DNA from: Macrostomum lignano
Lineage: Eukaryota
Assembly: GCA_002269645.1 (NCBI GenBank)
Contig: NIVC01000297.1
Coordinates: forward strand, 372,001 to 436,000
Length of the DNA: 64,000 nucleotides
Reading direction: 5' to 3'
Shown piece after piece: positions 16,609 to 40,632 of the stretch. The translations under genes were made by a program, and so were the position numbers. The notes below the pieces were generated by a model that had not been told where the DNA came from, made no database searches, and saw only the letters and a program-made list of their open reading frames with translations. The stretch's first letter is position 1; each line of letters starts with the position of its first letter.

Positions 16609-17115
16609 TCAAACAGTAGTAGTTTTCCAACGCCTCTTGCAAGCCTGACAACTCGCATAGCGCCGTCTTCTCGAAAAGGCGGGGCTAGTAAGTACAATGT
16701 AGAAAACCGCAAGGCCAGTGAAGCAGCCTAAAACGCATGTAGCAATTTTATATGGTCGAATGGCCTCGCTACAGTCATTCTGGACAGCGCCTGCGCTAGG
16801 GTTGGCTGTAGACGCAGCCACACTACTAGCAGGGGCAGTAGTAGCTGCGGACTCGACAGCCGCTTTAGATTGTTCCCAGAAATCTGCGCAAGAGGACTTA
16901 ATCAGCGGCCTGTCGCACCTGGCTGCCCAGGCTTTGCCAAAGTCGCCGCGGCAGTGGGATAAACTTGGACAGTCCTTGCAATTGCTGGCTCCCTCGCTGT
17001 CGCGATACTGGCCAAGGGGACAGGCAGGCAGGGGAACCGCCAGCATGGGCGGCACCAGCGCCAATGTTATTAAAAGTGCCAACTGCAGCTGCATGAAGGT
17101 TGGTGTGACATGCAT
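16609..17115 (-). CDS. R1: TNFR-like single-CRD type-I membrane protein
   Basis: Signal-like LALLITLALVPPMLA; CPLGQY-x8-CKDCPSLSHC-x11-C-x8-C; S/T/A stalk; TM; RRRR stop-transfer. Confidence 0.75.
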   Translation of the reverse strand: MHVTPTFMQLQLALLITLALVPPMLAVPLPACPLGQYRDSEGASNCKDCPSLSHCRGDFGKAWAARCDRPLIKSSCADFWEQSKAAVESAATTAPASSVAASTANPSAGAVQNDCSEAIRPYKIATCVLGCFTGLAVFYIVLTSPAFSRRRRYASCQACKRRWKTTTV

Positions 17116-17139
17116 TTGATGCAGACTGTCTATGAATGC

Positions 17140-17232
17140 TTTTTTCCTGTGTCTGTTTGTCATAGTTTCCGCATTAGTATCTGCCAGTCTGTCTGCCCAC
17201 CTGCCTTGTGTGTGCCTGTCTGTCTGTCTTTG

Positions 17233-17281
<49 letters not shown>

Positions 17282-17306
17282 TTGTGTCTGTCTGTCTGTC
17301 TGTCTT

Positions 17307-17372
<66 letters not shown>

Positions 17373-17412
17373 GGTCTGTCTGTTTGTTTGTGTGTCCGTC
17401 TGTCTGTCTTTG

Positions 17413-17465
<53 letters not shown>

Positions 17466-17640
17466 TTGTGTCTGTTTGTCTGTCTGTCTTTGTGTCCGTC
17501 TGTCTGTCTGCCTGCCTGCCTGCCTGTCTGTCTGCCTGCCTGCCTGCCTGCCTGCCTGTCTGTCTGTCTGTCTGTCTGTCTTTGTGTCTGTTTGTCTGTC
17601 TGTCTGTCTTTGTGTCTGTCTGTCTGTCTGTCTGTCTTTG

Positions 17641-17699
<59 letters not shown>

Positions 17700-17816
17700 G
17701 AATGCTTGTTTCCAGTGTCTCTGTCAGTCAGTCAGTCAGTCAGTCAGTCAGGCAGTCAGTCAGTCAGTCAGTCAGTCAGTCAGTCAGTCAGTCAGTCAGT
17801 CAGTCAGTCAGTCAGG

Positions 17817-17855
<39 letters not shown>

Positions 17856-18135
17856 GCAGTCAGTCAGTCAGTCAGTCAGTCAGTCAGTCAGTCAGTCAGT
17901 CAGTCAGTCAGTCAGTCAGTCAGTCAGTCAGTCAGTCAGTCAGTCAGGCAGTCAGTCAGTCAGTCAGTCAGTCAGTCAGTCAGTCAGTCAGTCAGTCAGT
18001 CAGTCAGTCAGTCAGTCAGTCAGTCAGTCAGTCAGTCAGTCAGTCAGTCAGTGTCTACCTGTCTGTATGTCTGCCTGTCTGTCTGTTTGTCGGTGACTGT
18101 CTGTCTGTCTCTGTCTGACTGTGTGTCCGTCTGTC
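17140..18135. repeat. Compound microsatellite: (TCTG)n then (TCAG)n
   Basis: Direct reading; upstream of R1. Confidence 0.97.
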
Positions 18136-18982
18136 TACTTGGTTGGCCATCTCCTATCACATAATATTTCAAAGAATACTTAGAATTTACCTTCTATAAG
18201 CATAGAAAAATAAATAACAAAAAAATATTAATTTGTCATCAGAGAAGTTTTATTTCAACGATTACGACTTGTCACAGACATCTTGTTCGAGAATATAAAT
18301 AATCAAATAAAGTAAAAATGTCAGGAAGAATTTTGACATTCAGGTTTTTCTGCAATTATCAGTTGAAATTACGGAATCACATGCTGCGTGTAAGTCGCAG
18401 ATAAACTTTGTGAAATTTGACAACGGTAAAATTCCAAATGGCAAGGAATTACATGTAAAATTAAATTAATTAATAAATTTAGCTATACTACTGCATTGAA
18501 TAACTATATCACCAAAAATGGTAGAGAGGCACTTGCTTTAGAAAGACCGAAAGGAGAATCCTAAAAATATAGGAGCCAGCCACTCATTTTGGCGCCGCAG
18601 CCAGGCTCTCATTTTGGCGCCGCAGCCAGGCGCTCATTTTGGCGCCGCAGGCACTCTATTTTGGTGCCCTGAAGTAAAATTATTGATTTCGATAACAGTT
18701 CAAAAAGTGGGACTGCCCATTCCGCTGACTCCTAAGCACACACAACCGCGCCAATATAGCTATGCCCCTAAGCGAGAACGTTACATAATCAAAAAATAAA
18801 TTATAATACAATTATCATTATCAAATTGTCAGTAGCTGTTTAAGTCGAGCAGAATCGGTGATCAGAAGCAATCCACGATAAACTGACCAGGCCAATCCGA
18901 TCCATATATTGATTTTCAATTCGTTTTATGGCGCTGAAATTTTATTCAGGGTGGGTGGGCAACGCTGTTCTGCAGTGAGACT

Positions 18983-19828: not shown

Positions 19829-19920
19829 GAGGCATACCTAAAAATCTGAGAATTTCACTGAAGAAACGTTTTCAACCACATGTATAAGACTTTCAAGGCA
19901 GTTTTAACCCAATACAAATA

Positions 19921-20496
19921 TCAACCGACCTTGCCTCGCTTACGATGACGAGCGCCACCATTTTTACCAGAATTTGGTGTCTGCCGCATAAGCAGCCCAT
20001 TCTTGTCGTCATGTCTGCCATTTTCAAAATTTCTCGTAGTTTTCGGTCTGTTCTTCATTCTATTGCAACCAAATTTATAAATTTTATGCACTGAAACCAG
20101 TAACCCAATGAGGGCAAACGGCGCAAGAATGGCTATGCCAATCTGACATTGCAGAACATGTTCGCAGTTACAATCATATGTAGCACTTGTGTTCATATCA
20201 GAGACACTGTTGAAATTATAAGACGATGAAGTTGTCTCAGCATCTCGAGTTTTCTCCCAGTATTCCTGACAGCCAGATTTAATAATCTCTTGCTCACAAT
20301 GAGCTCGCCAAAATTTATCTGTGCCGATGCACTGCTGCCAAGTTGGGCACTTATCGCATTTACCAGTCGCCTCTTTGTTATGATAGGTGCCCATTGGGCA
20401 GTTGATTGACGGCAGCGCGGCCGTGAGACATACCACTCCTGTCAACACTATAAATGACTGGATAATTTTAATCGACGACATCAGAAATTTTAGCAT
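19921..20496 (-). CDS. R2: TNFR-like single-CRD type-I membrane protein
   Basis: Signal-like N-terminus; CPMGTY..CDKCPTWQQC..FWRAHC-x8-C; TM IGIAILAPFALIGLLVSV; basic tail. Confidence 0.75.
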   Translation of the reverse strand: MLKFLMSSIKIIQSFIVLTGVVCLTAALPSINCPMGTYHNKEATGKCDKCPTWQQCIGTDKFWRAHCEQEIIKSGCQEYWEKTRDAETTSSSYNFNSVSDMNTSATYDCNCEHVLQCQIGIAILAPFALIGLLVSVHKIYKFGCNRMKNRPKTTRNFENGRHDDKNGLLMRQTPNSGKNGGARHRKRGKVG

Positions 20497-20527
20497 GATT
20501 AGTAAAAGTAACTGAAAATTATGAGGG

Positions 20528-22388
20528 TATAGATTAGCAATTCATTATATTCTGTTTTGTAACTAAAGGAATAGATTAGCAATTCATTATATTCTGTTTT
20601 GTAACTAAAGGAATAGATTAGCAATTCATTATATTCTGTTTTGTAACTAAAGGAATAGATTAGCAATTTATTCTATTCTGTTTTGTAACTAAAGGAATAG
20701 ATTAGCAATTTATTCTATTCTGTTTTGTAACTAAAGGAATAGATTAGCAATTCATTATATTCTGTTTTGTAACTAAAGGAATAGATTAGCAATTTATTCT
20801 ATTCTGTTTTGTAACTAAAGGAATAGATTAGCAATTCATTATATTCTGTTTTGTAACTAAAGGAATAGATTAGCAATTCATTATATTCTGTTTTGTAACT
20901 AAAGGAATAGATTAGCAATTCATTATATTCTGTTTTGTAACTAAAGGAATAGATTAGCAATTTATTCTATTCTGTTTTGTAACTAAAGGAATAGATTAGC
21001 AATTTATTCTATTCTGTTTTGTAACTAAAGGAATAGATTAGCAATTCATTATATTCTGTTTTGTAACTAAAGGAATAGATTAGCAATTTATTCTATTCTG
21101 TTTTGTAACTAAAGGAATAGATTAGCAATTCATTATATTCTGTTTTGTAACTAAAGGAATAGATTAGCAATTTATTCTATTCTGTTTTGTAACTAAAGGA
21201 ATAGATTAGCAATTCATTATATTCTGTTTTGTAACTAAAGGAATAGATTAGCAATTTATTCTATTCTGTTTTGTAACTAAAGGAATAGATTAGCAATTTA
21301 TTCTATTCTGTTTTGTAACTAAAGGAATAGATTAGCAATTCATTATATTCTGTTTTGTAACTAAAGGAATAGATTAGCAATTCATTATATTCTGTTTTGT
21401 AACTAAAGGAATAGATTAGCAATTCATTATATTCTGTTTTGTAACTAAAGGAATAGATTAGCAATTTATTCTATTCTGTTTTGTAACTAAAGGAATAGAT
21501 TAGCAATTCATTATATTCTGTTTTGTAACTAAAGGAATAGATTAGCAATTCATTATATTCTGTTTTGTAACTAAAGGAATAGATTAGCAATTTATTCTAT
21601 TCTGTTTTGTAACTAAAGGAATAGATTAGCAATTTATTCTATTCTGTTTTGTAACTAAAGGAATAGATTAGCAATTCATTCTATTCTGTTTTGTAACTAA
21701 AGGAATAGATTAGCAATTCATTCTATTCTGTTTTGTGTCGAAGGGAATAGATTAGCAATTCATTCTATTCTGTTTTGTATCTAAGGGAATAGATTAGCAA
21801 TTTATTCTATTCTGTTTTGTAACTAAAGGAATAGATTAGCAATTTATTCTATTCTGTTTTGTAACTAAAGGAATAGATTAGCAATTTATTCTATTCTGTT
21901 TTGTAACTAAAGGAATAGATTAGCAATTTATTCTATTCTGTTTTGTAACTAAAGGAATAGATTAGCAATTCATTCTATTCTGTTTTGTAACTAAAGGAAT
22001 AGATTAGCAATTTATTCTATTCTGTTTTGTAACTAAAGGAATAGATTAGCAATTCATTCTATTCTGTTTTGTAACTAAAGGAATAGATTAGCAATTCATT
22101 CTATTCTGTTTTGTAACTAAAGGAATAGATTAGCAATTTATTCTATTCTGTTTTGTGTCGAAGGGAATAGATTAGCAATTCATTCTATTCTGTTTTGTAT
22201 CTAAGGGAATAGATTAGCAATTCATTCTATTCTGTTTTGTAACTAAAGGAATAGATTAGCAATTCATTCTATTCTGTTTTGTGTCGAAGGGAATAGATTA
22301 GCAATTCATTCTATTCTGTTTTGTATCTAAGGGAATAGATTAGCAATTCATTCTATTCTGTTTTGTGTTTAAGGGAATAGACTAGCAA
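20528..22388. repeat. 42-bp minisatellite directly upstream of R2
   Basis: (taactaaaggaatagattagcaattcattatattctgttttg)n. Confidence 0.97.
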
Positions 22389-23185
22389 TCCACTTTATGA
22401 AAACGTTTTTTTATTATTGCTAAATGTGATAAAAGCGCTATCTTTCTAATCGTAATATCAAAAACAAGTCGGAATTTATCAAGAGTTGTAAAGCTTAGTT
22501 ATTTAAAACAAACACACAATTGCAAAAAAGGCTAAAATGAGTAATTATGTGTAGAACACAGTTTTGTAAGAAAGACAGCTGTCTACCTTTAGCTGGATAA
22601 CACAAATTGTTGATGTGCAAGCAATATAGAAACAAGGACTAGCTACTCAAGTAACATGTATATATATATATAAGGTTGTCCTTGGTATTGAAAGCTACTA
22701 AAAAATACTAAAAAATAAATATAAGATTAAATGAACGCAAAAATGCCTCATGGAATGCATTGTGTATACGAATATGTTGGTTCCAATGAGTCAAAAACAA
22801 TCAGAGAAACAACAATGCTATATAGTAGTCACGCATAAAAACATCCGTGAAAAATAATGACAGAAATTCTACAATTAAAAAATTTTTCCTTTACTAGCAG
22901 TGACAAAAATATCAGAAAAATTCAAGCAATAATAATAACTAAAATAGCCATAGTACTAGTAGTGAAACTAGCGGAAAATTGCAAGCACGGAATCTATAAT
23001 TGCAAAAAACAATTATAAATATATACTAGGATACACAAGTTAAATAATGAGTATTAAGTTGCGTTAATATTAAGCAATTGATAAACTGTTTGGCAGTCGC
23101 AATCAAAGTCAGTTAGATGGAGATTAATCCCCATCATTATAGACAGCATCTTCGGCATCTGTGGGTCCAGTCGGGTTGTCATCCG

Positions 23186-23647
23186 TCAGCAGCTGGATAC
23201 AGAGTTTTCACCTCTAATAACACAGGCTACCACGACAATAACGATCAAGCAGACCAATAAAATGACGAATAAAATCCAGACAATTGGCCAAGGATCTACT
23301 TTGCCAGCCGCACCTTCATTTGATCGTTTAGTGGTAGCATTGAATGCGTTAGAACAATTGCTCACAGCAACGCCACTGGTGTCAGAGCCGTTACCTGGCA
23401 CATTCTCAGCGGGATTAGGCGGCTGATTATTATTTTCCCAAAATTGCGAGCAAGCCAATTTAATCGACTGCCACTCGCACCTGGCTGCCCAGGCTTCGTC
23501 AGAGCGGCACTGTGAAAGGCTCGGACAGAGCCGGCAATCGTTGGCTCCAGGGTGGCGATATTTGCCAGGCGGACAGGCAGGCAGGGGATCTGCCGGCATG
23601 GGCAGCACCAGAATAAATATAGCGAGCAACCGAATTGCCTTTAGCAT
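23186..23647 (-). CDS. R3: TNFR-like membrane protein; tail cut short by an apparent 1-nt deletion
   Basis: MLKAIRLLAIFILVLP signal; CPPGKY..CRLCPSLSQC..WAARC-x8-C; TM DPWPIVWILFVILLVCLIVIVVVAC. Confidence 0.7.
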   Translation of the reverse strand: MLKAIRLLAIFILVLPMPADPLPACPPGKYRHPGANDCRLCPSLSQCRSDEAWAARCEWQSIKLACSQFWENNNQPPNPAENVPGNGSDTSGVAVSNCSNAFNATTKRSNEGAAGKVDPWPIVWILFVILLVCLIVIVVVACVIRGENSVSSC

Positions 23648-23687
23648 CTGAAATTTGATGGAGTATGTCTATGAATGCTTGTTTCAT

Positions 23688-24318
23688 GTGTCTGTCTGTC
23701 TGTCTGTGTTTCTGTCTGTCTGTCTGTCTGTGTGTCTGTCTGTGTTTCTGTTTGTCTGTCTGTGTTTCTGTTTGTCTGTCTGTGTTTCTGTTTGTCTGTA
23801 TGTCTGTCTGTGTTTCTGTTTGTCTGTCTGTCTGTCTGTGTTTCTGTTTGTCTGTATGTCTGTCTGTGTTTCTGTTTGTCTGTATGTCTGTCTGTGTTTC
23901 TGTTTGTCTGTATGTCTGTCTGTGTTTCTGTTTGTCTGTCTCTGTTTCTGTTTGTCTGTATGTCTGTCTGTGTTTCTGTTTGTCTGTCTGTGTTTCTGTT
24001 TGTCTGTATGTCTGTCTGTGTTTCTGTTTGTCTGTCTGTGTTTCTGTTTGTCTGTCTGTGTTTCTGTTTGTCTGTATGTCTGTCTGTGTTTCTGTTTGTC
24101 TGTCTGTGTTTCTGTTTGTCTGTCTGTCTGTGTGTCTGTTTGTCTGTCTGTCTGTCTGACTGTCTGTCTGTCTGTCTGCCTACCTGTCTCTCTGTCTGTC
24201 TGTCTGTCTGTCTGTCTGTGCGTCTGTGTGTGTGTGTGTGTGTCTGTCTGTCTGTCTGTCTGTGCGTCTGTGTGTGTGTGTCTGTCTGTCTGTCTGTCTG
24301 TGCGTCTGTGTGTGTGTG

Positions 24319-24353
<35 letters not shown>

Positions 24354-24368
24354 GCGTCTGTGTGTGTG

Positions 24369-24421
<53 letters not shown>

Positions 24422-24458
24422 GCCTGTCTGTCTGTCTGACTGTCTGTCTGTCTATCTA

Positions 24459-24489
<31 letters not shown>

Positions 24490-24496
24490 GTCTGCC

Positions 24497-24545
<49 letters not shown>

Positions 24546-24590
24546 GCCTGTCTGTCTGTCTGTCTGTCTGTCTGTGTCTGTCTGTCGGTC
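23688..24590. repeat. (TCTG)n/(TG)n microsatellite upstream of R3
   Basis: Direct reading. Confidence 0.97.
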
Positions 24591-25293
24591 TGCCCTTCTT
24601 CGCGCACCCTGATAGATATACTTGTTCATTATCACAGAAAACGTACCTATCTAGGAAGTTTATTTAATATTTAAAGTGCTTAACTTAATAATAACACTAT
24701 ATAAAATAGGAACACAATTCGATTAAAACTCATTACCCGATTTCTAAATTTTAAAACTGAATTGTTGCAATAACTAGTCGAATAACTAATCGACTAAGCT
24801 ATTTTATAAGCTTTTTTGTATAGAAAAAAAATTAAAGACACAATAAAACGTGATTCCAAAAAATAAAATGACAAGTACGTGTACTTTAGAATTTTGGAAT
24901 AAATATGATTAACAGCCTTCGATTTTGGTACAAGTGGAGATTTTGAAGTAAAATATTTAGACAATATTTCTTAAAATAAAAACTACTAAAAATTTTTTGT
25001 TAAAAAGATTGTTTTAGCAAGCGTGGCGAATTGTAATGCAAAAATTCTATTTTATTAAACCGGTAAAAACAGATTAGAACAAAAAATATCTATCTACCAA
25101 ATCTATAAGTGTATAAAAGTTGTTATTTCAAAAAGATTGTTAAAAAAATTGTATTGGGACGCCAGAAAATAATTCTGATTTAAGGTCCAAGCCATGCTGT
25201 TGGTACCACAATAGGTTTCTCATGGTTGCAAAGTTATTGAACCAGTCAACAAGTTCTAGCCCTCGACGGGGGTCTTATTCAATAAATTTACAG

Positions 25294-26181
25294 TTACAAC
25301 GCAGTTGTCAGGATGTCTTCCTTAGAATACGGTTGTTCTTTAATCTTAGATGACTCATAGCCGACATTCGTTTGATTATCATCAGACGGCATCAAATTTT
25401 CTAGCTCATGGCTTGGCAACTCACTATTTGAGGATGGAGTTCTCTTACGGTTTCCAGCGGAACGCTGTAGTCTGTTGGTAGACAGATTTGAAGCCTGTTT
25501 CAGTTGCTGTTGAAACTTCTGCTTTTGTTTATTGTTCTTTGACCATTTGTAGAAGAAGGCGAGGAAAGAAATTAGGATGAGCATCAGAAGGATCATTATT
25601 AGTACGCCCAAACCAATTTTTATCTTTTCGTAGACCGGAAAGGAAAAACCAGCAGGCTTATCAGTACAACCAACCGGTCTACCAGCAGAACCAACCGGTC
25701 TACCAGCAGAACCAACCGGTCTACCAGCAGAACCAACCGGTCTACCAGCAGAACCAACCGGTCTACCAGCAGAACCAACCGGTCTACCAGCAGAACCAGC
25801 CGGTCTATTAGTAGAACTAGCCGGTCTATCAGTAGAACCAGCCGGTCTATCAGTAGAACCAGGCATTTCTGTCGTGGATTGGATAGCAGCCTCTTTAGTT
25901 GGTTCAACAGAGGCGTCGCTGGTGCCAGCCATCCGCGGCTGCAGCTCATCCAAGGTGAACTTGCAGTATTCACGAACATGGCTCCGTCTGCACTCATGTC
26001 CTACAGTGGGATTGCTGCGACACCGGTCAAGGCTAGGACAGCGCTTGCAGTCATGGGTGCTCATGTCAGGGTATTCGCCTGGCTGACACTTTGGAGGCCA
26101 ATTACCCATGGTTCTGGCTTCTGGGTTGACGGACAACCATAACAGTACAATCATAGCTAGAGAAAGCAAAATTGCCTTCAT
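25294..26181 (-). CDS. R4: TNFR-like membrane protein with a 7-aa repeat stalk
   Basis: MKAILLSLAMIVLLWLS signal; CQPGEY..CKRCPSLDRC-x9-C-x8-C; (GSAGRPV)n stalk; TM; about 80-aa tail. Confidence 0.8.
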   Translation of the reverse strand: MKAILLSLAMIVLLWLSVNPEARTMGNWPPKCQPGEYPDMSTHDCKRCPSLDRCRSNPTVGHECRRSHVREYCKFTLDELQPRMAGTSDASVEPTKEAAIQSTTEMPGSTDRPAGSTDRPASSTNRPAGSAGRPVGSAGRPVGSAGRPVGSAGRPVGSAGRPVGSAGRPVGCTDKPAGFSFPVYEKIKIGLGVLIMILLMLILISFLAFFYKWSKNNKQKQKFQQQLKQASNLSTNRLQRSAGNRKRTPSSNSELPSHELENLMPSDDNQTNVGYESSKIKEQPYSKEDILTTAL

Positions 26182-26429
26182 GTTTGTTTGTTTGCATGCA
26201 AATAAAAGAAGAAATGCTTTCATTAGTTTGAAGTGATGTTTCTTGGAAAAAATTCCTAAAAGCTTTGCGCAAAATACACTGGCTATAGAAATTCCTTTTC
26301 TTTCAGCAAAAATAGCACCACTTTCTATTTTCACTTTCAGGTATGACTTGCCTGTCTTATTGTCACTAAAACCTATTTTGCTAACCAATTACTAGCAATA
26401 GTAAAAATCGTGTGCATTTTTACCTGCAC

Positions 26430-26945
26430 AATGAGAATCATCCTCCGATGAGATCTCACACCATAAGAATCATTCTCCGGTGAGATCCCACACCATAAGA
26501 ATCATTCTCCGGTGAGATCCCACACCATAAGAATCATTCTCCGGTGAGATCTCACACCATGAGAATCAGCATCCAACGAGATTTCACACCATGAAAATCA
26601 ACATCCAATGAGACCTCGCACCACGAGAATCAGCATCCAATGAGATCTCACACCATGAGAATCAGCATCCAATGAGATCTCACACCATGAAAATCAACAT
26701 CCAATGAGACCTCGCACCACGAGAATCAGCATCCAATGAGATCTCACACCATGAGAATCATCTACCGAAGAGATCTTACACCATGAGAATCAGCATTCAA
26801 TGAGATCTCACACCATGAGAATCAGCATCCAATGAAATCTCACACAATGAGAATCAGCATCCAATGAGATCTCACACCATGAGAATCAGCATCCAATGAG
26901 ATCTCACACCATGAGAATCATCCACCGATGAGATCTCACACCAAA
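26430..26945. repeat. 32-bp minisatellite upstream of R4
   Basis: tgagatctcacaccatgagaatcagcatccaa. Confidence 0.92.
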
Positions 26946-27782: not shown

Positions 27783-28847
27783 CTACACTTCGGTACTTAA
27801 CATGATTTCATCAGAATCCAGTTGTAACTTTATGTTAGATGACTCATCGCCGCCATTCCTTTGAAGATCATTAGATGACAGCATGTTAGATGACTCATCA
27901 CCGCCATTCCTTTGATTATCATCAGACGGCATCAAGTTGTCTAGCTCATTCTTCGGCAACTCACTAGTGGAAGATGGAGTTCTCTTACGGTTGCCAGAGG
28001 AGCGCTGCAGGCTGTTGGTAGACAGACTTGAAGCCTGTTTCAGCTTCTGTTGAAATTTCTGCTTCTGTTTATTGTTCTTCCACCATTGATAGTAGAAGAC
28101 TAGGATAGCAATCAGGATGGCAGTGAGAAGGATCACTATTGGTACCATCAAACCAATCAGTATCTTTGCGTAGAGCGGAATGGCAGATTTATCGGCAGTG
28201 CCAGCAGATTTATCGGCAGTACCAGCAGATTTATCGGCAGTACCAGCAGATTTATCGGCAGTACCAGCAGATTTATCGGCAGTACCAGCAGATTTATCGG
28301 CAGTGCCAGCAGATTTATCGGCAGTTCCAGCAGATTTATCGGCAGTACCAGCAGATTTATCGGCAGTACCAGCAGATTTATCGGCAGTGCCAGCAGATTT
28401 ATCGGCAGTTCCAGCAGATTTATCGGCAGTACCAGCAGATTTATCGGCAGTTCCAGCAAATTTATCGGCAGTCTCAGCAGATTTATCGGCAGTACTAGCA
28501 GATTTATCAATACTACCAGATGGTTTCGCAGTACTACCAATAGGTTTATTAGCAGCGGCTTCAGCTGGTTCAACAGAGGCCTCGATGTTTCCAGCCATCC
28601 GCGGCTGCAGCTCATCCAAGGTGAACTTGCAGTATTTGCGGACAAAGGTCCGCCTGCACTCGTGCCTCACTGTGGGATTGCTGCGGCACCGGTCAAGAGT
28701 AGGACACAGTTTGCAGTCATGGGTGCTCATGTCAGGGTATCTGCCTGGCTCACATTTTGGAGGCCAATCGCCCATGGTTCTGGCCTCTGGGTTGATGGAA
28801 AACCACAACGGTACAATCACAGCCAGAGAAAGCAAACCTGCTTTCAT
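27783..28847 (-). CDS. R5: TNFR-like membrane protein, close paralog of R4
   Basis: MKAGLLSLAVIVPLWFS; CEPGRY..CKLCPTLDRC..; (GTADKSA)n stalk; TM; tail closely matches R4. Confidence 0.8.
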   Translation of the reverse strand: MKAGLLSLAVIVPLWFSINPEARTMGDWPPKCEPGRYPDMSTHDCKLCPTLDRCRSNPTVRHECRRTFVRKYCKFTLDELQPRMAGNIEASVEPAEAAANKPIGSTAKPSGSIDKSASTADKSAETADKFAGTADKSAGTADKSAGTADKSAGTADKSAGTADKSAGTADKSAGTADKSAGTADKSAGTADKSAGTADKSAGTADKSAGTADKSAGTADKSAIPLYAKILIGLMVPIVILLTAILIAILVFYYQWWKNNKQKQKFQQKLKQASSLSTNSLQRSSGNRKRTPSSTSELPKNELDNLMPSDDNQRNGGDESSNMLSSNDLQRNGGDESSNIKLQLDSDEIMLSTEV

Positions 28848-28984
28848 ATTTGCTTGCTGGCATGCAAATCAAAGAAGAAATGCTTGCATTATAGTGTGAA
28901 CTGATGTTTCTTGGAACATCTCTAAAAGCTTGACGCAAAATGCACTAGCTACACAAATTATTTTTCTTTTAGCAAAAAAGAACA

Positions 28985-30716: not shown

Positions 30717-31486
30717 TTATTTGGATAGAGATTCTTTGTCAACACCATCGGTATCTGTGGGGCCAGCTGTCTGCTCGTCCTTCGTCAGTAACTGGCTGAA
30801 AGAATTTTCGCCTTTAATAAACTTGCATTGCTTGTCTGCACTGGATTCAACTGCAGGTCGAGCATTTTTGCACAGTTTGTAAATAACACACGATAGGACG
30901 GCAATAGCGATTAAGGAAATGAATAAAAGGACAGCTAAAACGATTGTCCAAGGATCTACTCTGCTATCCTGGCAGGCTGCACCATTCTTTGATCCTTCGG
31001 TGGTATTGGGTTGCAGAGATTCTGCAGAGCTAGAATTATTGCTCACAGCAACACCACCAATGTCCGAGCTGCTACCTGGCGCATTCTCAGCGAGATTTGG
31101 CGCTTCAGTCACTGATTTACCAATTAGTGATGAGGCGTTTCTTCTTCGCCAGGAATCTGATGGACAGTTGCACTTGCAATCACATGCGGCACCTGTATTC
31201 ACATCAGAGGCATTGCCTGGCAGCTTGGCGCTACTGTTGAAATTATGAGCTGATGAAGCCGTCTCAGCATCTCGAGACTGGTTCCAAAATTCCTGACAGC
31301 CAGCTCTAATAATCTCCTGCTCGCACTGAGCTCGCCAAAATTTATGTTCTCCGATGCACTGCTGCCATGTTGGGCATTTATCACAGTTGTCAGTAGCGCC
31401 CTTATTGTGATAGGTGCCCAGTGGGCAGTTTTTTGACGGCAGCCCGGCAGTGAGACATGGCATGCCTGAATTATTTTTAACGACAT
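30717..31486 (-). CDS. R6: TNFR-like membrane protein with a frameshifted signal peptide (possible pseudogene)
   Basis: CRD closely matches R2; stalk/TM/tail closely match R9. The ATG homologous to R2 (31486) is out of frame; an in-frame ATG lies at 31463. Confidence 0.6.
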
Positions 31487-31894
31487 CTTGATCTGTAGCA
31501 AGATTGGTGAAGTCACTGAAATTATATGTAGAATTGAATAGATTAGCAATCCATTCTATTCTGCTTTGTATCAAAGGGAATAGATTAGCAATCCACTCCA
31601 TCAAACGTTTTTATTATTGCTAAATCATGTGCTATATTTCTAAGCAATAAAACAAAAACAAATCGGACTTTATCGAGTTGGAAAGCTTAGTTATTTAAAA
31701 CAAAGGCACACAAACGCACGGATTGAAAAACAGGTTAAAATGAGTAATTATGTGTATCAAACTGTTGGTAAGAAGGACAACTGTCTAACTTCAGCTGGAT
31801 ATAGCAAGTAGTTAATCGATAGACTTTAAAAGTACTAAAGTAAGACAAAAATATGAATAAACGATTGAATGAGCTTTGGTGAAGGTCAGTAAGA

Positions 31895-31895: not shown

Positions 31896-31969
<74 letters not shown>

Positions 31970-31970
31970 G

Positions 31971-32041
<71 letters not shown>

Positions 32042-32042
32042 G

Positions 32043-32077
<35 letters not shown>

Positions 32078-32260
32078 GTGTGTGTGTGTGTCTGTCTGTC
32101 TGTCTGTCTGTGTGTCTGTCTGTCTGTCTGTGTGTGTGTGTCTGTCTGTGTGTCTGTCTGTCTGTCTGTCTATCTGTCTGTCTGTCTGTTTGTGTGTGTG
32201 TGTGTGTCTGTCTGTCTGTCTGTCTGTCTGTGTGTCTGTCTGTCTGTCTGTCTGTGTGTG

Positions 32261-32299
<39 letters not shown>

Positions 32300-32350
32300 G
32301 TGTGTGTGTGTGTGTGTCTGTCTGTCTGTCTGTGTGTGTGTGTGTGTGTG

Positions 32351-32389
<39 letters not shown>

Positions 32390-32406
32390 GTGTGTGTGTG
32401 TGTGTG

Positions 32407-32441
<35 letters not shown>

Positions 32442-32450
32442 GTGTGTGTG

Positions 32451-32493
<43 letters not shown>

Positions 32494-32536
32494 GTGTCTG
32501 TGTGTCTGTCTGTCTGTCTGTCTGTCTGTGTGTGTG

Positions 32537-32567
<31 letters not shown>

Positions 32568-32592
32568 GTGTCTGTGTGTCTGTGTGTGTGTG

Positions 32593-32689
<97 letters not shown>

Positions 32690-32690
32690 T
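31895..32690. repeat. (TCTG)n/(TG)n microsatellite
   Basis: Direct reading. Confidence 0.97.
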
Positions 32691-33826: not shown

Positions 33827-34324
33827 TCAATTGCGAACATATTTATAAAGTTTGTGCAATAAAAACCCTGGCCCGATGATGGCAAGGATGGCGATGGCAA
33901 TCTGATATGGCAGAACATTTTCACAGTTGCAATCACATGCGACACCCGTAGTCATATCAGAGGCATCGCCAGCTAGTTTGGCGCTACTGTTGGAAGCCGT
34001 CCCAGCAGCTCGAGTGATGGCATTCATGCTTTGCAGAGACTCGCCCGCTTCTGCAGAGCCAGAATTACTGCTCACAGCAACATCACTGATGTCGGAGCTG
34101 CTACCTGACGACCAATAATCTGAGCAAGCGGACTTAATCAACGGCCTGTCGCACCTGGCTGCCCAGGCTCTGCCAAAGTCGCCGCGGCACTTCGATAAAC
34201 TTGGGCAGTCCTTGCAATTGCTGGCTCCCTCGCTGTCCCGATACTGGCCAGGGGGGCAGGCAGGCAGGGGAGCCGCCAGCATGGGCGACACCAGCGCCAA
34301 TGTTGTTGAAAGCGCCAGATGCAT
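33827..34324 (-). CDS. R7: TNFR-like membrane protein with a premature stop after the TM
   Basis: CRD nearly identical to R1; TM like R2; TGA at 33827-33829 where R2 has AGA, and an R2-like tail continues in frame past it. Confidence 0.7.
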   Translation of the reverse strand: MHLALSTTLALVSPMLAAPLPACPPGQYRDSEGASNCKDCPSLSKCRGDFGRAWAARCDRPLIKSACSDYWSSGSSSDISDVAVSSNSGSAEAGESLQSMNAITRAAGTASNSSAKLAGDASDMTTGVACDCNCENVLPYQIAIAILAIIGPGFLLHKLYKYVRN

Positions 34325-34374
34325 TGCGGTGGGTGGCTAAAATTTGATGGAGACTGTCTATGAATGCTTGTTTC

Positions 34375-34398
34375 CTGTGTCTGTCTGTCTGTCTTTCC

Positions 34399-34490
<92 letters not shown>

Positions 34491-34496
34491 TCTTAG

Positions 34497-34533
<37 letters not shown>

Positions 34534-34562
34534 TCTTATTGTCTGTCTGTCTGTCTTCTTAG

Positions 34563-34595
<33 letters not shown>

Positions 34596-34624
34596 TCTTA
34601 TTGTCTGTCTGTCTGTCTTCTTAG

Positions 34625-34665
<41 letters not shown>

Positions 34666-34671
34666 TCTTAG

Positions 34672-34752
<81 letters not shown>

Positions 34753-34781
34753 TCTTAGTGTCTGTCTGTCTGTCTTCTTAG

Positions 34782-34814
<33 letters not shown>

Positions 34815-34843
34815 TCTTATTGTCTGTCTGTCTGTCTTCTTAG

Positions 34844-34884
<41 letters not shown>

Positions 34885-34913
34885 TCTTAGTGTCTGTCTG
34901 TCTGTCTTCTTAG

Positions 34914-34970
<57 letters not shown>

Positions 34971-35062
34971 TCTTAGTGTCTGTCTGTCTGTCTTCTTAGT
35001 GTCTGTCTGTCTGTCTGTCTGTCTGTCTTCTTAGTGTCTGTCTGTCTGTCTGTCTGTCTGTC
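34375..35062. repeat. (TCTG)n with tcttagtg interruptions, upstream of R7
   Basis: Direct reading. Confidence 0.97.
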
Positions 35063-36470: not shown

Positions 36471-36662
36471 TGAACTAGTAGCAGACAACTAACCTCATCT
36501 CACCCCTGTTCCACCTCAGCACCACAGGTCTGGTGCAGGGCTCAGCGGAGCTACGGGACAGCCAATCTGCATTTTGCAATTTCAAGTTGGGCTCGCACGA
36601 GCACTTCAATTATTTTACATTATTTAGTCTGTCTGGGCGATTTTACTGAAATTTGTTAAAAC

Positions 36663-38002
36663 TTAATTGCACGAACTTTTAGAATGACCATTAGCGGTTT
36701 TTGATGCTGAAATGTTTTTAAACATAACAAACAGGAATAAAACGCCAGCGATCGTCCAAGAAATAGATCTTTTTATCAATGCAGCTCCATCATTTTTTTG
36801 AGTCGTAACTTCATTTTTCCAAAAATCTGCGCAAGCAGACTTAATGGAAGCCCTGTCACACCTGGCTTCCCAGGCTTTGCAAGAGTCGCCGCGGCGGGTC
36901 GCCATCATAAGCGCGCACCGGCACAAGCGCGCCTGTGTATTTTATGTCAAAGTCTGGCACAGGCGCGCAGAGACATAAGCGCGCACGTTTTGACTTGCAC
37001 AAGAGCGCGGTAGAAAGTGCTCAGCATTGGCATAAGCGCGCACCATCACAAGACCGCACTGACATAAGCGCGCTGTCAGAGTTTGGCACAAGCGCGCACT
37101 TCTGGCTTTGTGTTGCAAAAGCGCGCAGTCAAGTTGCTCCATCGTCTGTCACAAAGTAGTCGATTGTATTTGTACGAATGAAATCGAATTGAAATCCTTT
37201 CGACCAGAAGATATTAGGCACGGTTCTGAATGTAGCCTGACTCAGACGACTCAGCATGTCAGGGTGAGCAAAGATGAGTCCATGGCCGTCATCAGCAGAT
37301 GATACACCACCCTGAATAATGATGACACTGTTGACACACCTGAAGCGGTCTGGAGCATCGCATATTGCTGCATACGCGTCGACAGCTGCTTTTGGAAGAG
37401 GTGGCAGCAGGCGTCTTCTTTGTCGATACATCGACGACTCCACTTCAGCAAATCCAATCCGATTGCCGACGGAGCTTGCCTGTGTCTCTCGGTCGAACAG
37501 ATCACGAAGGAATGAACTGCTCTCACCGGCCTTCCGCTTCAAATTGGCTCATAGCCGAAGTATTTCCTTCTCCTTTGAATCACCGTCGTGGTTGTGCGCG
37601 ATGAGTCTCAGCACACCATCCTTCTCGACGGCGCGTCCCGGACAGTTCTTGTTAGTGCAGCGATAGCTGACTGTCCCATTTCTAACTCTATCTTTCCGAT
37701 AAATGCAGACGCCGTGCGTATAGACTACTGAGCCGATTCTTTCCCCTTCGATTGGCTCCATTGTGTTTCAAACACTCCAACTGCGACTGAGACAGAGGTT
37801 GTCTTATTTATCTAAGTCGCAGTATCTATCGACAGTGTACATGCTTACAATTGTGCTGGCATTGGCACTGCGCTGGACTGGGGCAATTCTTGCAATCCAT
37901 AGCGCCCTCTTTGTCGCGGTAGTGGCCAGGCGGACAGGCAGGCAGTGGACCTGCCAGCCTCGGCAGCACCAGCGCCAGTGTGACTAATATTGCCAACCGC
38001 AT
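36663..38002 (-). pseudogene. R8: TNFR-like paralog split by a roughly 970-bp insertion
   Basis: 5' part MRLAILVTLALVLPRLAGPLPACPPGHYRDKEGAMDCKNCP (38002 to about 37864); 3' part RGDSCKAWEARCDRASIKSACADFW..TM (36895-36663). Confidence 0.75.
36896..37863 (-). mobile_element. Truncated Mutator-like (MULE) element with a FLYWCH-type transposase N-terminus
   Basis: YRC-x4-C..HNH Zn finger (37761-37549); in-frame TGA; then LPPLP and LIFA..TFRTVP..F motifs; repeated AAGCGCGC subterminal motifs at 36908-37130. Confidence 0.7.
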
Positions 38003-39272
38003 GGCGTTTTACTCGTATATCTGAAATTGTATGGAGAATGTTATCAATGCTTGCTTCCTGTGTCTGCCTGTCCGTCCGTGTCTGTTTGTCTGTCTGTCTG
38101 TCTGTCATTTTTCCACGCCCGCTAAGAATTATCTTCAGCTTCCTGCACTAATGTCAAAATATAATTCTGGTAGAGTAGCTCGCATTAAAGATTTCCCACA
38201 TTTCTATATAGTTGATTTAAAATTTGAAGGTCAGTCGAATTGAATAAATAAACACATCACGAATGATAGTAAATGAAAAATATGGTTGCTGTTCATGCAG
38301 GACTAGATAGATATATTTGTTCATTATTGATAAGTAATAATTTTTTGCAATACTTGTTTTCAGAGTATGAATTATTCAAAACACTATCAATTGTAAAACA
38401 GTAAACAAAAAGTCGTTGGTGTCAGATGTGTCAAAAAATGGGAATGACATCATAAGGCAGTTGCACACAGAAAACGTAGTTATTTAAATCTTTGAAGTGC
38501 TTAACTTTAATAATAATATCGTAGGTAATTGTTAGTAAGAATTTTGATTAAAATGTATTACTTATTCACTAAATATGCTACTTTATATCATTTATTTTAC
38601 GCAGAAAAAAACAATAAAGACACAAAGGAGGTTATATACCGTACTAATTAAAAGATAACTACATAGTGAATTGCACTAGTGAATTGACTAGTGAATTGCA
38701 GGCACGACAACCTCTTTATAGTTTTAGAATAAAAATATAATTGAAAGTATTTGAGGGAATAGATTATATTAGCAATCCATTCTATCAAGCAATTTCTTCT
38801 TGCTAAAATCATGTAATAAAAGTGCTATTAGGATATATTTCTAAGCAATAAAACAAAAATAAGTCGGATTTTATCAAGAGTTGGAAAGCCTAGTTATTTA
38901 AAACAAAGGCACACAAACTTACGGATTGCAAAGCAGGTTAAAATGAGTAATATTGTGTAGTAAACTGTCGGTAAGAAAGACAACTGTCTAACTTCAGCTG
39001 GATATAGCAAATTCAATAAAAGATTCAATGAGTTTTGCAAATAGCGCCAGTAAGAAGCCATAGACTAAAATGCCAGTTATGGGAATGCATTTTATAATAC
39101 GAGCTACAAATTTCAATGTGCAAATTTTCGGTAGCTAGTTCCAGTGTATCAAAAAGCAATCATAAAAATAACAATGCTATATAGTAATCAGACATCAGAA
39201 AATTCGGAGCAAATGATGACAAATTCCACATTTTAAAATTCTCCTTTACTCACAGTAGTAATTATGTAAATA

Positions 39273-39417
39273 ATAAACGCCGTTTAATTCACATTCTGTG
39301 GTTAGAATGTCCGAGGCTGCGTTTAATGGTCTCGAGGCGAGCGTAGCGAGCCGAGGACCATTGATTGTAGCCGAGGATATTCTAACCATAGACTATGATG
39401 AATTAAACGGCGTTTAT
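39273..39417. mobile_element. MITE-like palindromic element
   Basis: 19-bp perfect inverted ends ataaacgccgtttaattca / tgaattaaacggcgtttat, with inner inverted arms. Confidence 0.6.
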
Positions 39418-39825
39418 CATATATTAAATTCGATTGCTCCTGATTTCGAGGAGATTATATGATATAATATCCTAGTTTTTGTTAAAAATTACCACAGACA
39501 ACACATTCCCGGCTCAGAATAGTACAATTTTTTAACGATTAAATAAGCAATCGTATTTTATATTAAAAAACTTCAAGCAGGAAAATTATAACTGAAATGA
39601 CTAACTGCACTACTCATAGTAAAAATGTAAGGAATTACGCTTATGTAAATTCGGGGCAAGCAAAACAATAATCATTAACATTGCCATGTTACTTACTAAC
39701 AGAAATAATATCGGTAAATTGCAAACAAAAAATCCATAATAGCTAAAAAGAATCCTAAATATATATATATATTAGCAAGCAATAGTTAAAATAATTGATA
39801 AAATGTTAGGCTGTCACAATCAAAG

Positions 39826-40632
39826 TTAGCTGGATTGAGATTCTTCGCCATCAATAAAGACAGCGGAATCATCGGCATCTGTATGGGCAGCTGTCTGCTC
39901 GTCCTTGGTCAGCAACTGGCTTACACAACTTTCGCCTTTATTAAACTTGCATTGCCTGTCTGCACTGGATTTAACTGCAGTGCGAGCATTTTTGCACTGT
40001 TTGTAAATAACACAGGATAGGACGATCACGCAGACCAATAAAAGTACAGCTAAAACCCAGACGATTGGCCAAGGATCTACTTTGTCAGCCGCATCATTAT
40101 TTGATCCTTCAGTGGTGGTATTAGGTTGCAGAGATTCTTTACAGCTAGACTTATTGTTCACAGCAACACCACTGATGTCGGAGCCGCTACGTGACGCATT
40201 CTCAGCGAGATTTGGCGCCTCAGTCACTGATTTACCAATTAGTGATGATGTGTTGCTTCTTGGCCAGGAATCTGAGGGACAGTTGCAGTTACACGCGACA
40301 CCAGTGTTCACATGAGATGCATTGCCAGGCTGCTTGGCGCTACTGTTGGAATTATGAGATGATGAAGCCGTCTCAGCATCTCGCGAGCCAGCCAAAGTGG
40401 AACAGTTGGGAAGACGACACACGCCTCGATTCCAGAGTTGTTGGCACTTCCAGCCCCAAAATTTCTCCATCAATCGGTGCGCTTGACTGCAGTCGAAGCA
40501 CACGCGTGGACAGTGACTATTCTGTTTAGCGTTGTTGTTCCAGTACGTAGGAACAGTCGGCACTCGGGCTTGGCAGAAGGCGACCAACTGTGCAGCGACA
40601 ATGCATTCATATGCGTAGCTTATGATACGCAT
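39826..40632 (-). CDS. R9: membrane protein with a divergent Cys domain on an R6-type stalk/TM/tail
   Basis: Signal-like N-terminus; C-x3-C-x2-C-x14-C-x8-C-x4-C; SRDAETASS...DPWPIVWVL... closely matches R6. Confidence 0.75.
   Translation of the reverse strand: MRIISYAYECIVAAQLVAFCQARVPTVPTYWNNNAKQNSHCPRVCFDCSQAHRLMEKFWGWKCQQLWNRGVCRLPNCSTLAGSRDAETASSSHNSNSSAKQPGNASHVNTGVACNCNCPSDSWPRSNTSSLIGKSVTEAPNLAENASRSGSDISGVAVNNKSSCKESLQPNTTTEGSNNDAADKVDPWPIVWVLAVLLLVCVIVLSCVIYKQCKNARTAVKSSADRQCKFNKGESCVSQLLTKDEQTAAHTDADDSAVFIDGEESQSS

What the first reader, a model, noticed from the sequence alone, without database searches (positions are those of the whole stretch)
16609..40632. Tandem cluster of nine TNF-receptor-like, single-CRD membrane protein genes (R1-R9)
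Seen: nine co-oriented, apparently single-coding-exon ORFs sharing the layout signal peptide, six-Cys domain, S/T-rich stalk, one TM and a short basic tail. The Cys spacing is C-x12/13-C-x2-C-x5-C-x9-11-C-x8-C, with P-G-x-Y after the first Cys (R9 diverges). Knowledge: this spacing resembles the single cysteine-rich domain of small TNFRSF members (BCMA, TACI, Fn14). No death domain is visible. Inference: a rapidly evolving, lineage-specific surface-receptor family, possibly for immune, allorecognition or reproductive recognition. I know of no description of it, but could not search.
Basis: partly seen in the sequence, partly recalled or inferred. Interest (0 to 1): 0.92.

Follow-up and report, generated by a model that had tools for sequence, protein, structure and literature searches.

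The report
Flatworm-specific six-cysteine membrane protein cluster
A tandem cluster in the flatworm Macrostomum lignano encodes a species-restricted, transcribed family of small single-pass membrane proteins. Their six-cysteine head only half resembles a TNF-receptor module, so they are a real orphan receptor-like family, not proven TNF receptors.

Summary
Nine co-oriented (minus-strand) family loci lie between 16609 and 40632. Seven (R1-R7) carry an invariant C-x12/13-C-x2-C-x5-C-x9-11-C-x8-C domain followed by a stalk, one TM helix and a tail.

Not all nine are intact. R8 is split by a FLYWCH-bearing transposon. R9 has lost the first Cys and the CPxGxY motif. R6 lacks a signal peptide. R3 and R7 have truncated tails.

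The window comes from Macrostomum lignano (764-Mb assembly). RNA-seq-derived GenBank models, all named "hypothetical protein", exist for R1, R5, R6, R7 and R9. They start at spliced-leader-type TTTCAG acceptors.

The Cys domain is under purifying selection (dN/dS 0.06-0.48). The stalk and tail are not (0.33-2.4).

Only the first ~22 residues (CPxGxY...CxxCP hairpin) match known families. Ephrin_rec_like/GCC2_GCC3 sits at threshold (24.3 bits against 23.1). TNFR_c6 is well below it (18.5 against 29.4). A profile search of 1.84 billion representative proteins found full-domain matches only in M. lignano. The AlphaFold2 model (pLDDT 79) shows a hairpin plus three helices. Foldseek found nothing significant, though TNFRSF chains dominate the weak hits.

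Verdict: a real, lineage-restricted, receptor-like family. TNFR membership is unproven and the ligand is unknown.

The parts
16609..17094 (-). R1. 161-aa type I membrane protein counted from Met24 of the 184-aa ORF that runs to 17163. Type-A Cys domain. Tail ends in -KTTTV.
   Evidence: ORF. The GenBank-derived model P0001 on this contig starts at 17088, directly after a CAG acceptor. Topology.
19921..20496 (-). R2. 191 aa. Type-B Cys domain, CDCNC motif next to the TM helix, 54-aa basic tail.
   Evidence: A TTTTCAG acceptor lies 15 nt upstream of the ATG.
23186..23647 (-). R3. 153 aa. Type-A Cys domain. Tail truncated by a frameshift relative to the 173-aa copy on contig C298.
   Evidence: A TTTCAG acceptor abuts the ATG.
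25294..26223 (-). R4. 309-aa ORF, probably starting at Met14 (26184). Type-C Cys domain, GSAGRPV 7-aa repeat stalk, 86-aa tail ending in -TTAL.
27783..28847 (-). R5. 354 aa. Type-C Cys domain, (GTADKSA)n repeat stalk, 103-aa tail ending in -STEV.
   Evidence: GenBank model PAA86029.1 (BOX15_Mlig028920g1) lies on this contig.
30717..31601 (-). R6. Type-B Cys domain joined to an R3-type stalk, TM helix and tail (chimera). It has no signal peptide. The transcript model begins at 31514, after an ATTTCAG acceptor.
33827..34324 (-). R7. 165 aa. Type-A Cys domain with an R2-type TM helix. A premature TGA cuts the tail, and R2-like tail coding continues behind the stop.
   Evidence: P0002 is the model of the 100% identical copy on C298.
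36663..38002 (-). R8 pseudogene. N-half 37826-38002 holds the leader and Cys1-Cys4. C-half 36663-36890 holds Cys5-Cys6, the TM helix and the tail. A transposon fragment of about 0.9 kb with a FLYWCH ORF (37549-37761) separates them.
   Evidence: Both R8-like copies on C298 carry the same insert.
39826..40632 (-). R9. 268 aa. Divergent R6-like copy that has lost Cys1 and CPxGxY. The ORF is intact and is annotated in GenBank.
17216..18136 (.). (GTCT)n array immediately upstream of R1. It stands for the arrays upstream of every copy: 20529-22389, 23689-24592, 26427-26943, 28982-29550, 31896-32689 and 34378-35062.
   Evidence: The association is observed. No function is shown.

Best explanation
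This is a Macrostomum-restricted family of transcribed type I membrane glycoproteins. Each protein has four parts after a cleaved leader:
- a ~50-residue domain locked by three disulfides, made of a TNFR/GCC2-type beta-hairpin (CPxGxY...CxxCP) followed by a helical sub-domain that is private to this family;
- a disordered, glycosylated stalk that in R4 and R5 is a mucin-like tandem repeat;
- one TM helix;
- a short cytoplasmic tail.

The head domain is the functional, constrained part and most likely binds an extracellular protein ligand at the cell surface. That step is inferred. The tails of R1, R4 and R5 end in S/T-x-V/L, which looks like a class I PDZ ligand, so they may couple to cortical scaffolds. 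That step is also inferred.

The cluster grows and decays through three processes: tandem duplication; unequal recombination that re-pairs head modules with stalk/TM/tail modules; and pseudogenisation. The mRNAs begin at spliced-leader-type acceptors next to the start codon. TNFR superfamily membership and the identity of the ligand are not established.
For: Family and Cys pattern.

Topology.

Organism: the neighbouring PARG gene is 97% identical to M. lignano BOX15_Mlig023323g1. The assembly is 764 Mb in 5269 contigs, against 5270 scaffolds in the Mlig_3_7 paper.

Transcription:
- GenBank models exist for R1, R5, R6, R7 and R9.
- That annotation derives only from RNA-seq transcripts cut at trans-splice and poly(A) sites (PMC5730564).
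- For R1 and R6 the models start directly after a (T)CAG acceptor, and R7's within a few nt of one. R2, R3 and R8 carry TTTCAG acceptors just upstream of the ATG.
- This matches the SL acceptor motif [T/C]TNCAG, and the SL ends in ATG (PMC8629364).

Selection: dN/dS is 0.06-0.48 in the Cys domain and 0.33-2.4 elsewhere.

Hairpin module:
- Ephrin_rec_like scores 24.3 and 23.6 bits against a cut-off of 23.1, covering profile positions 13-35 of 48. TNFR_c6 scores 18.5 bits.
- 69 of the 74 hits in 1.84e9 representative proteins are multi-repeat GCC2-like proteins that match only positions ~4-25. Full-domain hits are M. lignano only.

Fold: AF2 gives pLDDT 79, with a hairpin at 11-23 and helices at 27-31, 35-41 and 44-63.

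Module shuffling and decay.
Against: There is no expression pattern, no protein-level data and no ligand.

The AF2 alignment is shallow: 14 sequences of three subtypes. The five models range from pLDDT 51 to 79, and the first run gave only 67.6.

Each dN/dS estimate rests on about 50 codons, uses the NG86 method, and could be distorted by gene conversion.

Four or five of the nine copies are damaged, so part of the family may be drifting.

The R5 model's 5' end would put the SL ATG out of frame, so trans-splicing is not proven for every copy.

A PDZ-ligand ending is a three-residue motif and could arise by chance.
Confidence: 0.6

Rival explanations
1. They are true, highly divergent TNF-receptor superfamily members: single-CRD receptors of the Fn14/BCMA/Grindelwald kind. 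On this reading they bind the lineage-specific TNF ligands of Macrostomum as 3:3 complexes.
For: The six-Cys spacing matches an A1-B2 TNFR CRD except for the Cys3-Cys4 gap.

Weak TNFR_c6 alignments extend as far as Cys5.

Most of the 35 weak Foldseek hits are TNFRSF chains (4-1BB, DR5). Xenopus Fn14 aligns over 46 columns with TM-scores of 0.34 and 0.41.

The predicted hairpin-plus-helices topology recalls Fn14 and BCMA. This comparison rests on my own knowledge of those structures.

M. lignano has 4-10 TNF ligands but only one canonical NGFR-like TNFR (PMC7519573). PF00020 is known to miss Grindelwald-type receptors (preprint 10.1101/2024.07.27.603686).
Against: No statistically significant sequence or structure match was found to any TNFR.

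The Cys3-Cys4 gap is 5 residues, not the CxxCxxC or CxxCxxxC signature.

The hairpin has no DxL motif. No death domain was found, and none of the TRAF motifs I looked for by eye was present.

The GCC2/ephrin-like profile scores higher than TNFR_c6.

The preprint already counts 16 Wengen-like and 1 Grindelwald-like receptors in M. lignano, so a receptor shortage is not established.
Confidence: 0.17
2. They are membrane-anchored mucin-like glycocalyx or adhesion proteins. On this reading the Cys domain is a generic GCC2/ephrin-receptor-like cap with no dedicated signalling ligand, and function resides mainly in the glycosylated, length-variable stalk.
For: The best Pfam match is Ephrin_rec_like/GCC2_GCC3.

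The R4 and R5 stalks are 7-aa tandem repeats whose copy number differs between homeologs.

There are many NxS/T sites. The tails are short or dispensable, since R3 and R7 are truncated.
Against: The stalk evolves nearly neutrally while the head is constrained.

The R1, R2 and R7 stalks are short (42-74 aa) and only 21-28% S+T.

GCC2 modules usually occur in arrays, and here there is only a half-module.
Confidence: 0.15
3. It is a young, largely non-functional gene family drifting in a repeat-rich, recently polyploid genome. On this reading transcription is incidental.
For: Copies are damaged: R8 by a transposon, R9 by a degenerate head, R6 by loss of its leader, R3 and R7 by truncation, and R2 on C40 by a frameshift.

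Overall dN/dS is 0.4-0.9.

No homologue was found outside the species.
Against: All six Cys plus G, Y and P are invariant across three subtypes that are only 16-38% identical.

Head-domain dN/dS falls to 0.06-0.3, with dS up to 0.7.

R1-R4 are retained on the homeologous contig C40.
Confidence: 0.08

Closest known systems
Small single-CRD TNF receptors: Fn14/TNFRSF12A, BCMA and TACI CRD2
   Same: They are type I membrane proteins with one ~40-50-aa six-Cys domain, a short stalk, a short tail and no death domain. The N-terminal hairpin carries Cys1...Cys2-x2-Cys3. The predicted topology of a hairpin followed by helices is shared. Fn14 appears among the weak Foldseek hits over 46 columns.
   Different: There is no significant sequence, profile or structure match. 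The Cys3-Cys4 gap is 5 residues, against 2-3. The Cys4-Cys5 and Cys5-Cys6 gaps are longer. There is no DxL ligand-binding turn and no recognisable TRAF site. The helical sub-domain (W-x-A-x-C...IK..C..FW) is unique to this family.
Ephrin_rec_like / GCC2_GCC3 modules (Pfam PF07699)
   Same: The CPxGxY...CxxCP hairpin matches profile positions 13-35 at about the gathering threshold. In the 1.84e9-protein search, the non-Macrostomum hits inspected carry repeats of this kind.
   Different: Only half of the 48-position profile is matched. The module occurs once, not in tandem arrays. The C-terminal half of the domain is unrelated.
Drosophila Grindelwald and Wengen-type invertebrate TNFRs
   Same: They have a single CRD, a type I topology, no death domain, and are poorly detected by PF00020.
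   Different: The Grindelwald signature CXXCXXXC is not present; here it is CxxCxxxxxC. No PDB Grindelwald chain appeared even at E<=10. I could not find out whether the preprint's 16 M. lignano 'Wgn' hits include these genes.
The canonical platyhelminth TNFR (SmTNFR/NGFR-like)
   Same: It is present in the same genome. TNFR_c6 hits above cut-off lie on contigs C131, C1979, C4259 and C4764.
   Different: That receptor has several CRDs and a death domain (PMC7519573). The window family did not appear in the genome-wide PF00020 search at E<=0.01.

Membership tests
TNFRSF (TNFR_c6, PF00020) | Profile match at or above the gathering score of 29.4 bits | tested here: not met
   The best score is 18.5 bits for the isolated R1 domain and 17.3 for whole R7. 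The window is not among the genome-wide PF00020 hits.
TNFRSF (TNFR_c6, PF00020) | A1-B2 six-Cys spacing with C-x2-G-x-Y and a CxxCxxC or CxxCxxxC core | tested here: inconclusive
   C-x2-G-x-Y, Cys1-x12/13-Cys2 and Cys2-x2-Cys3 are present. The Cys3-Cys4 gap is 5 residues rather than 2-3.
TNFRSF (TNFR_c6, PF00020) | Structural superposition on solved TNFR CRDs | tested here: inconclusive
   Foldseek's best E-value is 1.4. Only 20-25 hairpin residues align (rmsd 1-2.4 A), yet TNFRSF chains dominate the list. The model has pLDDT 79.
TNFRSF (TNFR_c6, PF00020) | Binds a trimeric TNF-family ligand | not testable with these tools
   No multimer prediction or binding assay is available. The ligands exist in this species according to PMC7519573. 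My six-frame PF00229 search found only one weak exon, at 18 bits.
BCMA / TACI / Fn14 single-CRD receptors | Match to the dedicated Pfam models, or to the sequences themselves | tested here: not met
   Neither Pfam scan (E<=1 for the whole proteins, E<=10 for three isolated domains) listed any BCMA, TACI or Fn14 family.
BCMA / TACI / Fn14 single-CRD receptors | DxL motif in the hairpin turn (BCMA, TACI, BAFF-R) | tested here: not met
   The turns read RDSEGAS, HNKEATG, RHPGAN and PDMSTH. The motif definition comes from my own knowledge.
Ephrin_rec_like / GCC2_GCC3 (PF07699) | Profile match at or above 23.1 bits across the domain | tested here: inconclusive
   The isolated R1 and R2 domains score 24.3 and 23.6 bits, and the whole proteins 22.6 and 22.4. 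Only profile positions 12/13-35 of 48 are covered. R3, R4 and R5 gave no reported hit.
Grindelwald-like receptors | A single CRD with the CXXCXXXC signature | tested here: not met
   All copies have CxxCxxxxxC. The signature is taken from the preprint 10.1101/2024.07.27.603686. The authors' HMM was not available.
Pacifastin (the UniProt automatic name of the chimeric model A0A1I8JGC1) | Pacifastin light-chain domain profile | tested here: not met
   P0004 gave no Pfam family at E<=10, and none of the eight window proteins hit it.

The most novel reading that the evidence does not exclude
The hairpin-helix domain is a previously unrecognised, flatworm-specific class of single-CRD TNF-family receptor. 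On this reading the tandem cluster supplies cognate receptors for the lineage-specific expansion of TNF ligands in Macrostomum, where only one canonical TNFR has been reported. Head/tail module shuffling would then generate new ligand-to-signal pairings.
Probability: 0.15. Interest if true: 0.75.

Novelty: new variant of a known kind. Interest (0 to 1): 0.45.

Why it matters
M. lignano is the transgenic flatworm model for regeneration, stem-cell and sexual-selection research.

A transcribed, constrained surface-receptor family found only there is a candidate for lineage-specific cell-cell or mating recognition. It is also a candidate for unrecognised TNF-type signalling.

The cluster gives a compact example of receptor genes evolving by re-pairing head modules with stalk/TM/tail modules inside a tandem array of a recent polyploid.

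The family has not been studied: the genes carry only 'hypothetical protein' labels. The finding also rests on sequence analysis alone.

Tried and rejected
Chance ORFs. Rejected. The Cys residues are invariant across divergent copies, the head domain is under purifying selection, and GenBank transcript models exist.

Transposon- or virus-borne family. Rejected. Copies occur only at the homeologous or allelic loci C297, C298, C40, C4025 and C3409. Only the insert in R8 is a dispersed repeat.

R8 insert as an intron. Considered. The GTAAG donor and CAG acceptor that I found leave the two halves out of frame. This is my reading.

Pacifastin, the UniProt automatic name. No support.

Expression data. 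I searched the supplements of four M. lignano papers for Mlig028920, Mlig004480 and Mlig014694 and found nothing. A full-text search also found nothing.

Accession list of the preprint's M. lignano receptors. Not held.

My third homologous-protein search, with the 64-aa alignment, was uninformative. Its length filter excludes full-length proteins.

The search with whole R5 was swamped by low-complexity repeat hits.

The bacterial promoter/terminator scan was irrelevant here.

The six-frame PF00229 search is insensitive in this intron-containing genome, so it does not show that TNF ligands are absent.


Full report
WHAT IS THERE

An ORF scan under the standard code, together with tBLASTn of the ORFs against the window, shows nine related loci between 16609 and 40632. 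All lie on the minus strand.

Seven are intact ORFs:
- R1, 16609-17163
- R2, 19921-20496
- R3, 23186-23647
- R4, 25294-26223
- R5, 27783-28847
- R6, 30717-31601
- R7, 33827-34324

All seven carry the spacing C-x12/13-C-x2-C-x5-C-x9-11-C-x8-C, with C-x2-G-x-Y after the first Cys. I aligned 14 copies from this contig and its homeologs. Their identity falls to 16-20%, yet the six Cys, the G, the Y and the P after Cys3 are invariant.

Hydropathy confirms the layout: an N-terminal hydrophobic leader, the Cys domain, a 42-159-aa stalk, one TM helix and a tail.

Several copies are damaged or divergent:
- R8 is split. Its leader and Cys1-Cys4 lie at 37826-38002. Cys5-Cys6, the TM helix and the tail lie at 36663-36890. 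The ~0.9-kb insert between them has a FLYWCH zinc-finger ORF, and its ends recur on dozens of contigs.
- R9 (39826-40632) has lost Cys1 and CPxGxY.
- R6 lacks a leader.
- R3 carries a frameshift and R7 a premature TGA. Both truncate the tail relative to the closest copies.

ORGANISM AND GENOMIC CONTEXT

The neighbouring gene at 42.9-50.2 kb is poly(ADP-ribose) glycohydrolase. Its exon is 97% identical to Macrostomum lignano BOX15_Mlig023323g1. The assembly has 764 Mb in 5269 contigs, which fits Mlig_3_7 (764 Mb, 5270 scaffolds; PMC5730564).

That line is a recent polyploid with about 180 Mb of >=95%-identical duplicated sequence. This explains the extra versions of the cluster:
- C298 carries R9-R8-R7-R6-R5-R4 at 96-100% identity. 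It then diverges into R3', a new R6-like gene, a second R8-like copy, R3'' and R2'.
- C40 carries R1-R4 plus an R9 fragment.
- C4025 and C3409 each carry one R1-like piece.

No copy lies elsewhere in the genome, so this is a single locus and not a dispersed element.

ARE THEY GENES?

GenBank carries models for several copies:
- R5: PAA86029.1 and PAA85995.1
- R6: PAA85994.1 and its counterpart on this contig
- R1: the contig's own model, and PAA92744.1 on C40
- R7: the model of the identical copy on C298
- R9: the exact 268-aa ORF

All are named 'hypothetical protein'. The annotation was built solely from RNA-seq transcripts cut at mapped trans-splice and poly(A) sites, so these copies are transcribed.

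The R1 and R6 models begin directly after (T)CAG acceptors that lie 0-15 nt upstream of, or just inside, the ORF start. The R7 model begins within a few nt of a TTTTAG. R1, R3, R7 and R8 share a conserved ~45-nt element ending in ...CATCAAATTTCAG. The published spliced-leader acceptor motif is [T/C]TNCAG, and the leader ends in ATG (PMC8629364). For R1 that ATG is in frame.

'Single coding exon' is therefore supported, and SL trans-splicing is likely. I did not see SL reads themselves. The R5 and R6 model starts would put the SL ATG out of frame.

SELECTION

I used Nei-Gojobori estimates on homeolog and paralog pairs. They give dN/dS of 0.06-0.48 for the Cys domain, with dS up to 0.72. The stalk, TM helix and tail give 0.33-2.4. 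The head is constrained, and the rest is relaxed or diversifying. The samples are small (about 50 codons) and gene conversion is possible. For example, R3 differs between C297 and C40 by dS 0.009, against 0.07-0.13 for its neighbours.

EVOLUTIONARY DYNAMICS

Self-comparison of the DNA shows three head types: A (R1, R3, R7, R8), B (R2, R6, R9) and C (R4, R5). They are combined with four stalk/TM/tail types. R7 pairs an A head with the R2 TM helix and tail. R6 and R9 pair a B head and R2-type stalk with the R3 stalk, TM helix and tail.

The R4 and R5 stalks are coding 21-bp tandem repeats, and their copy number differs between homeologs. The family therefore evolves by tandem duplication, unequal recombination and decay.

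WHAT IS THE DOMAIN?

Sequence-profile searches:
- Pfam on whole proteins gives only sub-threshold hits.
- On the isolated domain, Ephrin_rec_like/GCC2_GCC3 just passes (24.3 and 23.6 bits against 23.1) but covers only profile positions 13-35 of 48. TNFR_c6 reaches 18.5 bits against 29.4.
- A family profile against all PDB sequences gives nothing significant. The best hits (DR4, the CaSR Cys-rich domain, EphB2) align only with positions 4-25.
- An exhaustive HMMER search of 1.84 billion representative proteins found 74 hits. The five full-length matches are all M. lignano models of this family. The other 69 match mainly the first ~22 positions, and those I inspected are proteins with many GCC2-type repeats.
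- The word-indexed search with R1 found only its own species.

Structure prediction:
- AlphaFold2 on the 14-sequence alignment gives pLDDT 79 and pTM 0.56. It predicts a beta-hairpin (11-14, 20-23) followed by helices at 27-31, 35-41 and 44-63.
- An earlier 7-sequence run was weaker (pLDDT 67.6) but showed the same hairpin and a C-terminal helix.
- Foldseek against the PDB finds nothing significant (best E = 1.4). Most of the 35 weak hits are TNFRSF chains (4-1BB, DR5) superposed on the 20-25-residue hairpin. Xenopus Fn14 aligns over 46 columns at TM 0.34/0.41.

Conclusion: the first half is a TNFR/GCC2-type hairpin module. The helical second half has no detectable relative. The overall topology recalls Fn14 and BCMA, but homology is not demonstrated.

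FUNCTION

Shown:
- The proteins have a predicted type I membrane topology.
- The N-terminal Cys domain is constrained and sits on a variable stalk.
- The genes are transcribed.
- No death domain or other Pfam domain occurs in the tails.

Inferred:
- The head binds an extracellular partner at the cell surface.
- The tails of R1 (-TTV, kept in three homeologs), R4 (-TAL) and R5 (-TEV) look like class I PDZ ligands and might anchor the proteins to scaffolds.
- I saw no TRAF consensus by eye.

The TNF link remains a hypothesis. M. lignano has 4-10 TNF ligands, and one canonical NGFR-like receptor has been reported (PMC7519573). A preprint counts 6 Eiger, 16 Wengen-like and 1 Grindelwald-like proteins there and notes that PF00020 misses Grindelwald-type receptors. 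I could not learn whether any of its 16 include this family. My own six-frame search for the TNF domain is insensitive here.

NOVELTY AND VERDICT

No paper in the searched library mentions these genes. Databases call them hypothetical. One chimeric model carries an unsupported automatic 'Pacifastin' name.

I rate it a new variant of a known kind: a lineage-restricted single-CRD receptor-like family built on a TNFR-superfamily hairpin. Interest is moderate. It would be high only if the TNF-ligand link were shown.

Noticed in passing
window 17216-18136, 20529-22389, 23689-24592, 26427-26943, 28982-29550, 31896-32689, 34378-35062: Every family gene has a 0.5-1.9-kb tandem array within about 30-400 bp upstream of its start. 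R1, R3, R6 and R7 have (GTCT)n. R2 has a 42-bp minisatellite. R4 and R5 have a 32-bp minisatellite. The arrays were duplicated along with the genes. Any role in the outron or promoter is unknown.
   Followed up: partly
window 23648-23680, 34337-34369, about 17100-17140, about 38020-38060 (minus strand): R1, R3, R7 and R8 share a conserved ~45-nt non-coding element, GACACAGGAAACAAGCATTCATAGACAGTCTCCATCAAATTTCAG. It ends in a spliced-leader-type acceptor just before the ATG. In R1 the acceptor has mutated, and a CAG acceptor inside the ORF is used by the annotated model.
   Followed up: partly
window 42901-45759 (minus strand): The 952-aa ORF is the last PARG exon (PARG_cat_C at residues 12-128) running on into about 2.1 kb of (GTCT)n read as (CLSV)n. 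It is an ORF artefact, not a real long protein.
   Followed up: yes
window 36950-37830: The insert in R8 is a dispersed repeat, and its two ends recur on many contigs. It carries a FLYWCH zinc-finger ORF (37549-37761). The same insert sits in both R8-like copies on contig C298 (98% and 94% identity), so the insertion predates those duplications.
   Followed up: yes
window 23186-23647 compared with G000:C40:357192-357653: R3 differs between the two homeologous contigs by dS of only 0.009. Its neighbours R1, R2 and R4 differ by dS 0.07-0.13. This suggests gene conversion between homeologs.
   Followed up: no
window 28183-28508 and 25668-25861: The R5 and R4 stalks contain coding 21-bp tandem repeats. 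The GenBank model of R5 (PAA86029.1, 273 aa) is 81 aa shorter than the genomic ORF, and the missing residues lie inside the repeat. The cause is probably transcript-assembly collapse or a real length variant.
   Followed up: partly
window 55739-56218 (minus strand): This is an exon of a pyridoxal-phosphate-dependent enzyme (PALP) next to PARG. One UniProt model (A0A1I8FTI8) fuses the PALP and PARG domains, which is probably a merged gene model.
   Followed up: no
L039 = G000:C4737:14937-15221: This was the only candidate from the six-frame TNF-domain search of the genome (18 bits, profile positions 34-125 of 127). It may be an exon of one of the published M. lignano TNF ligands.
   Followed up: no
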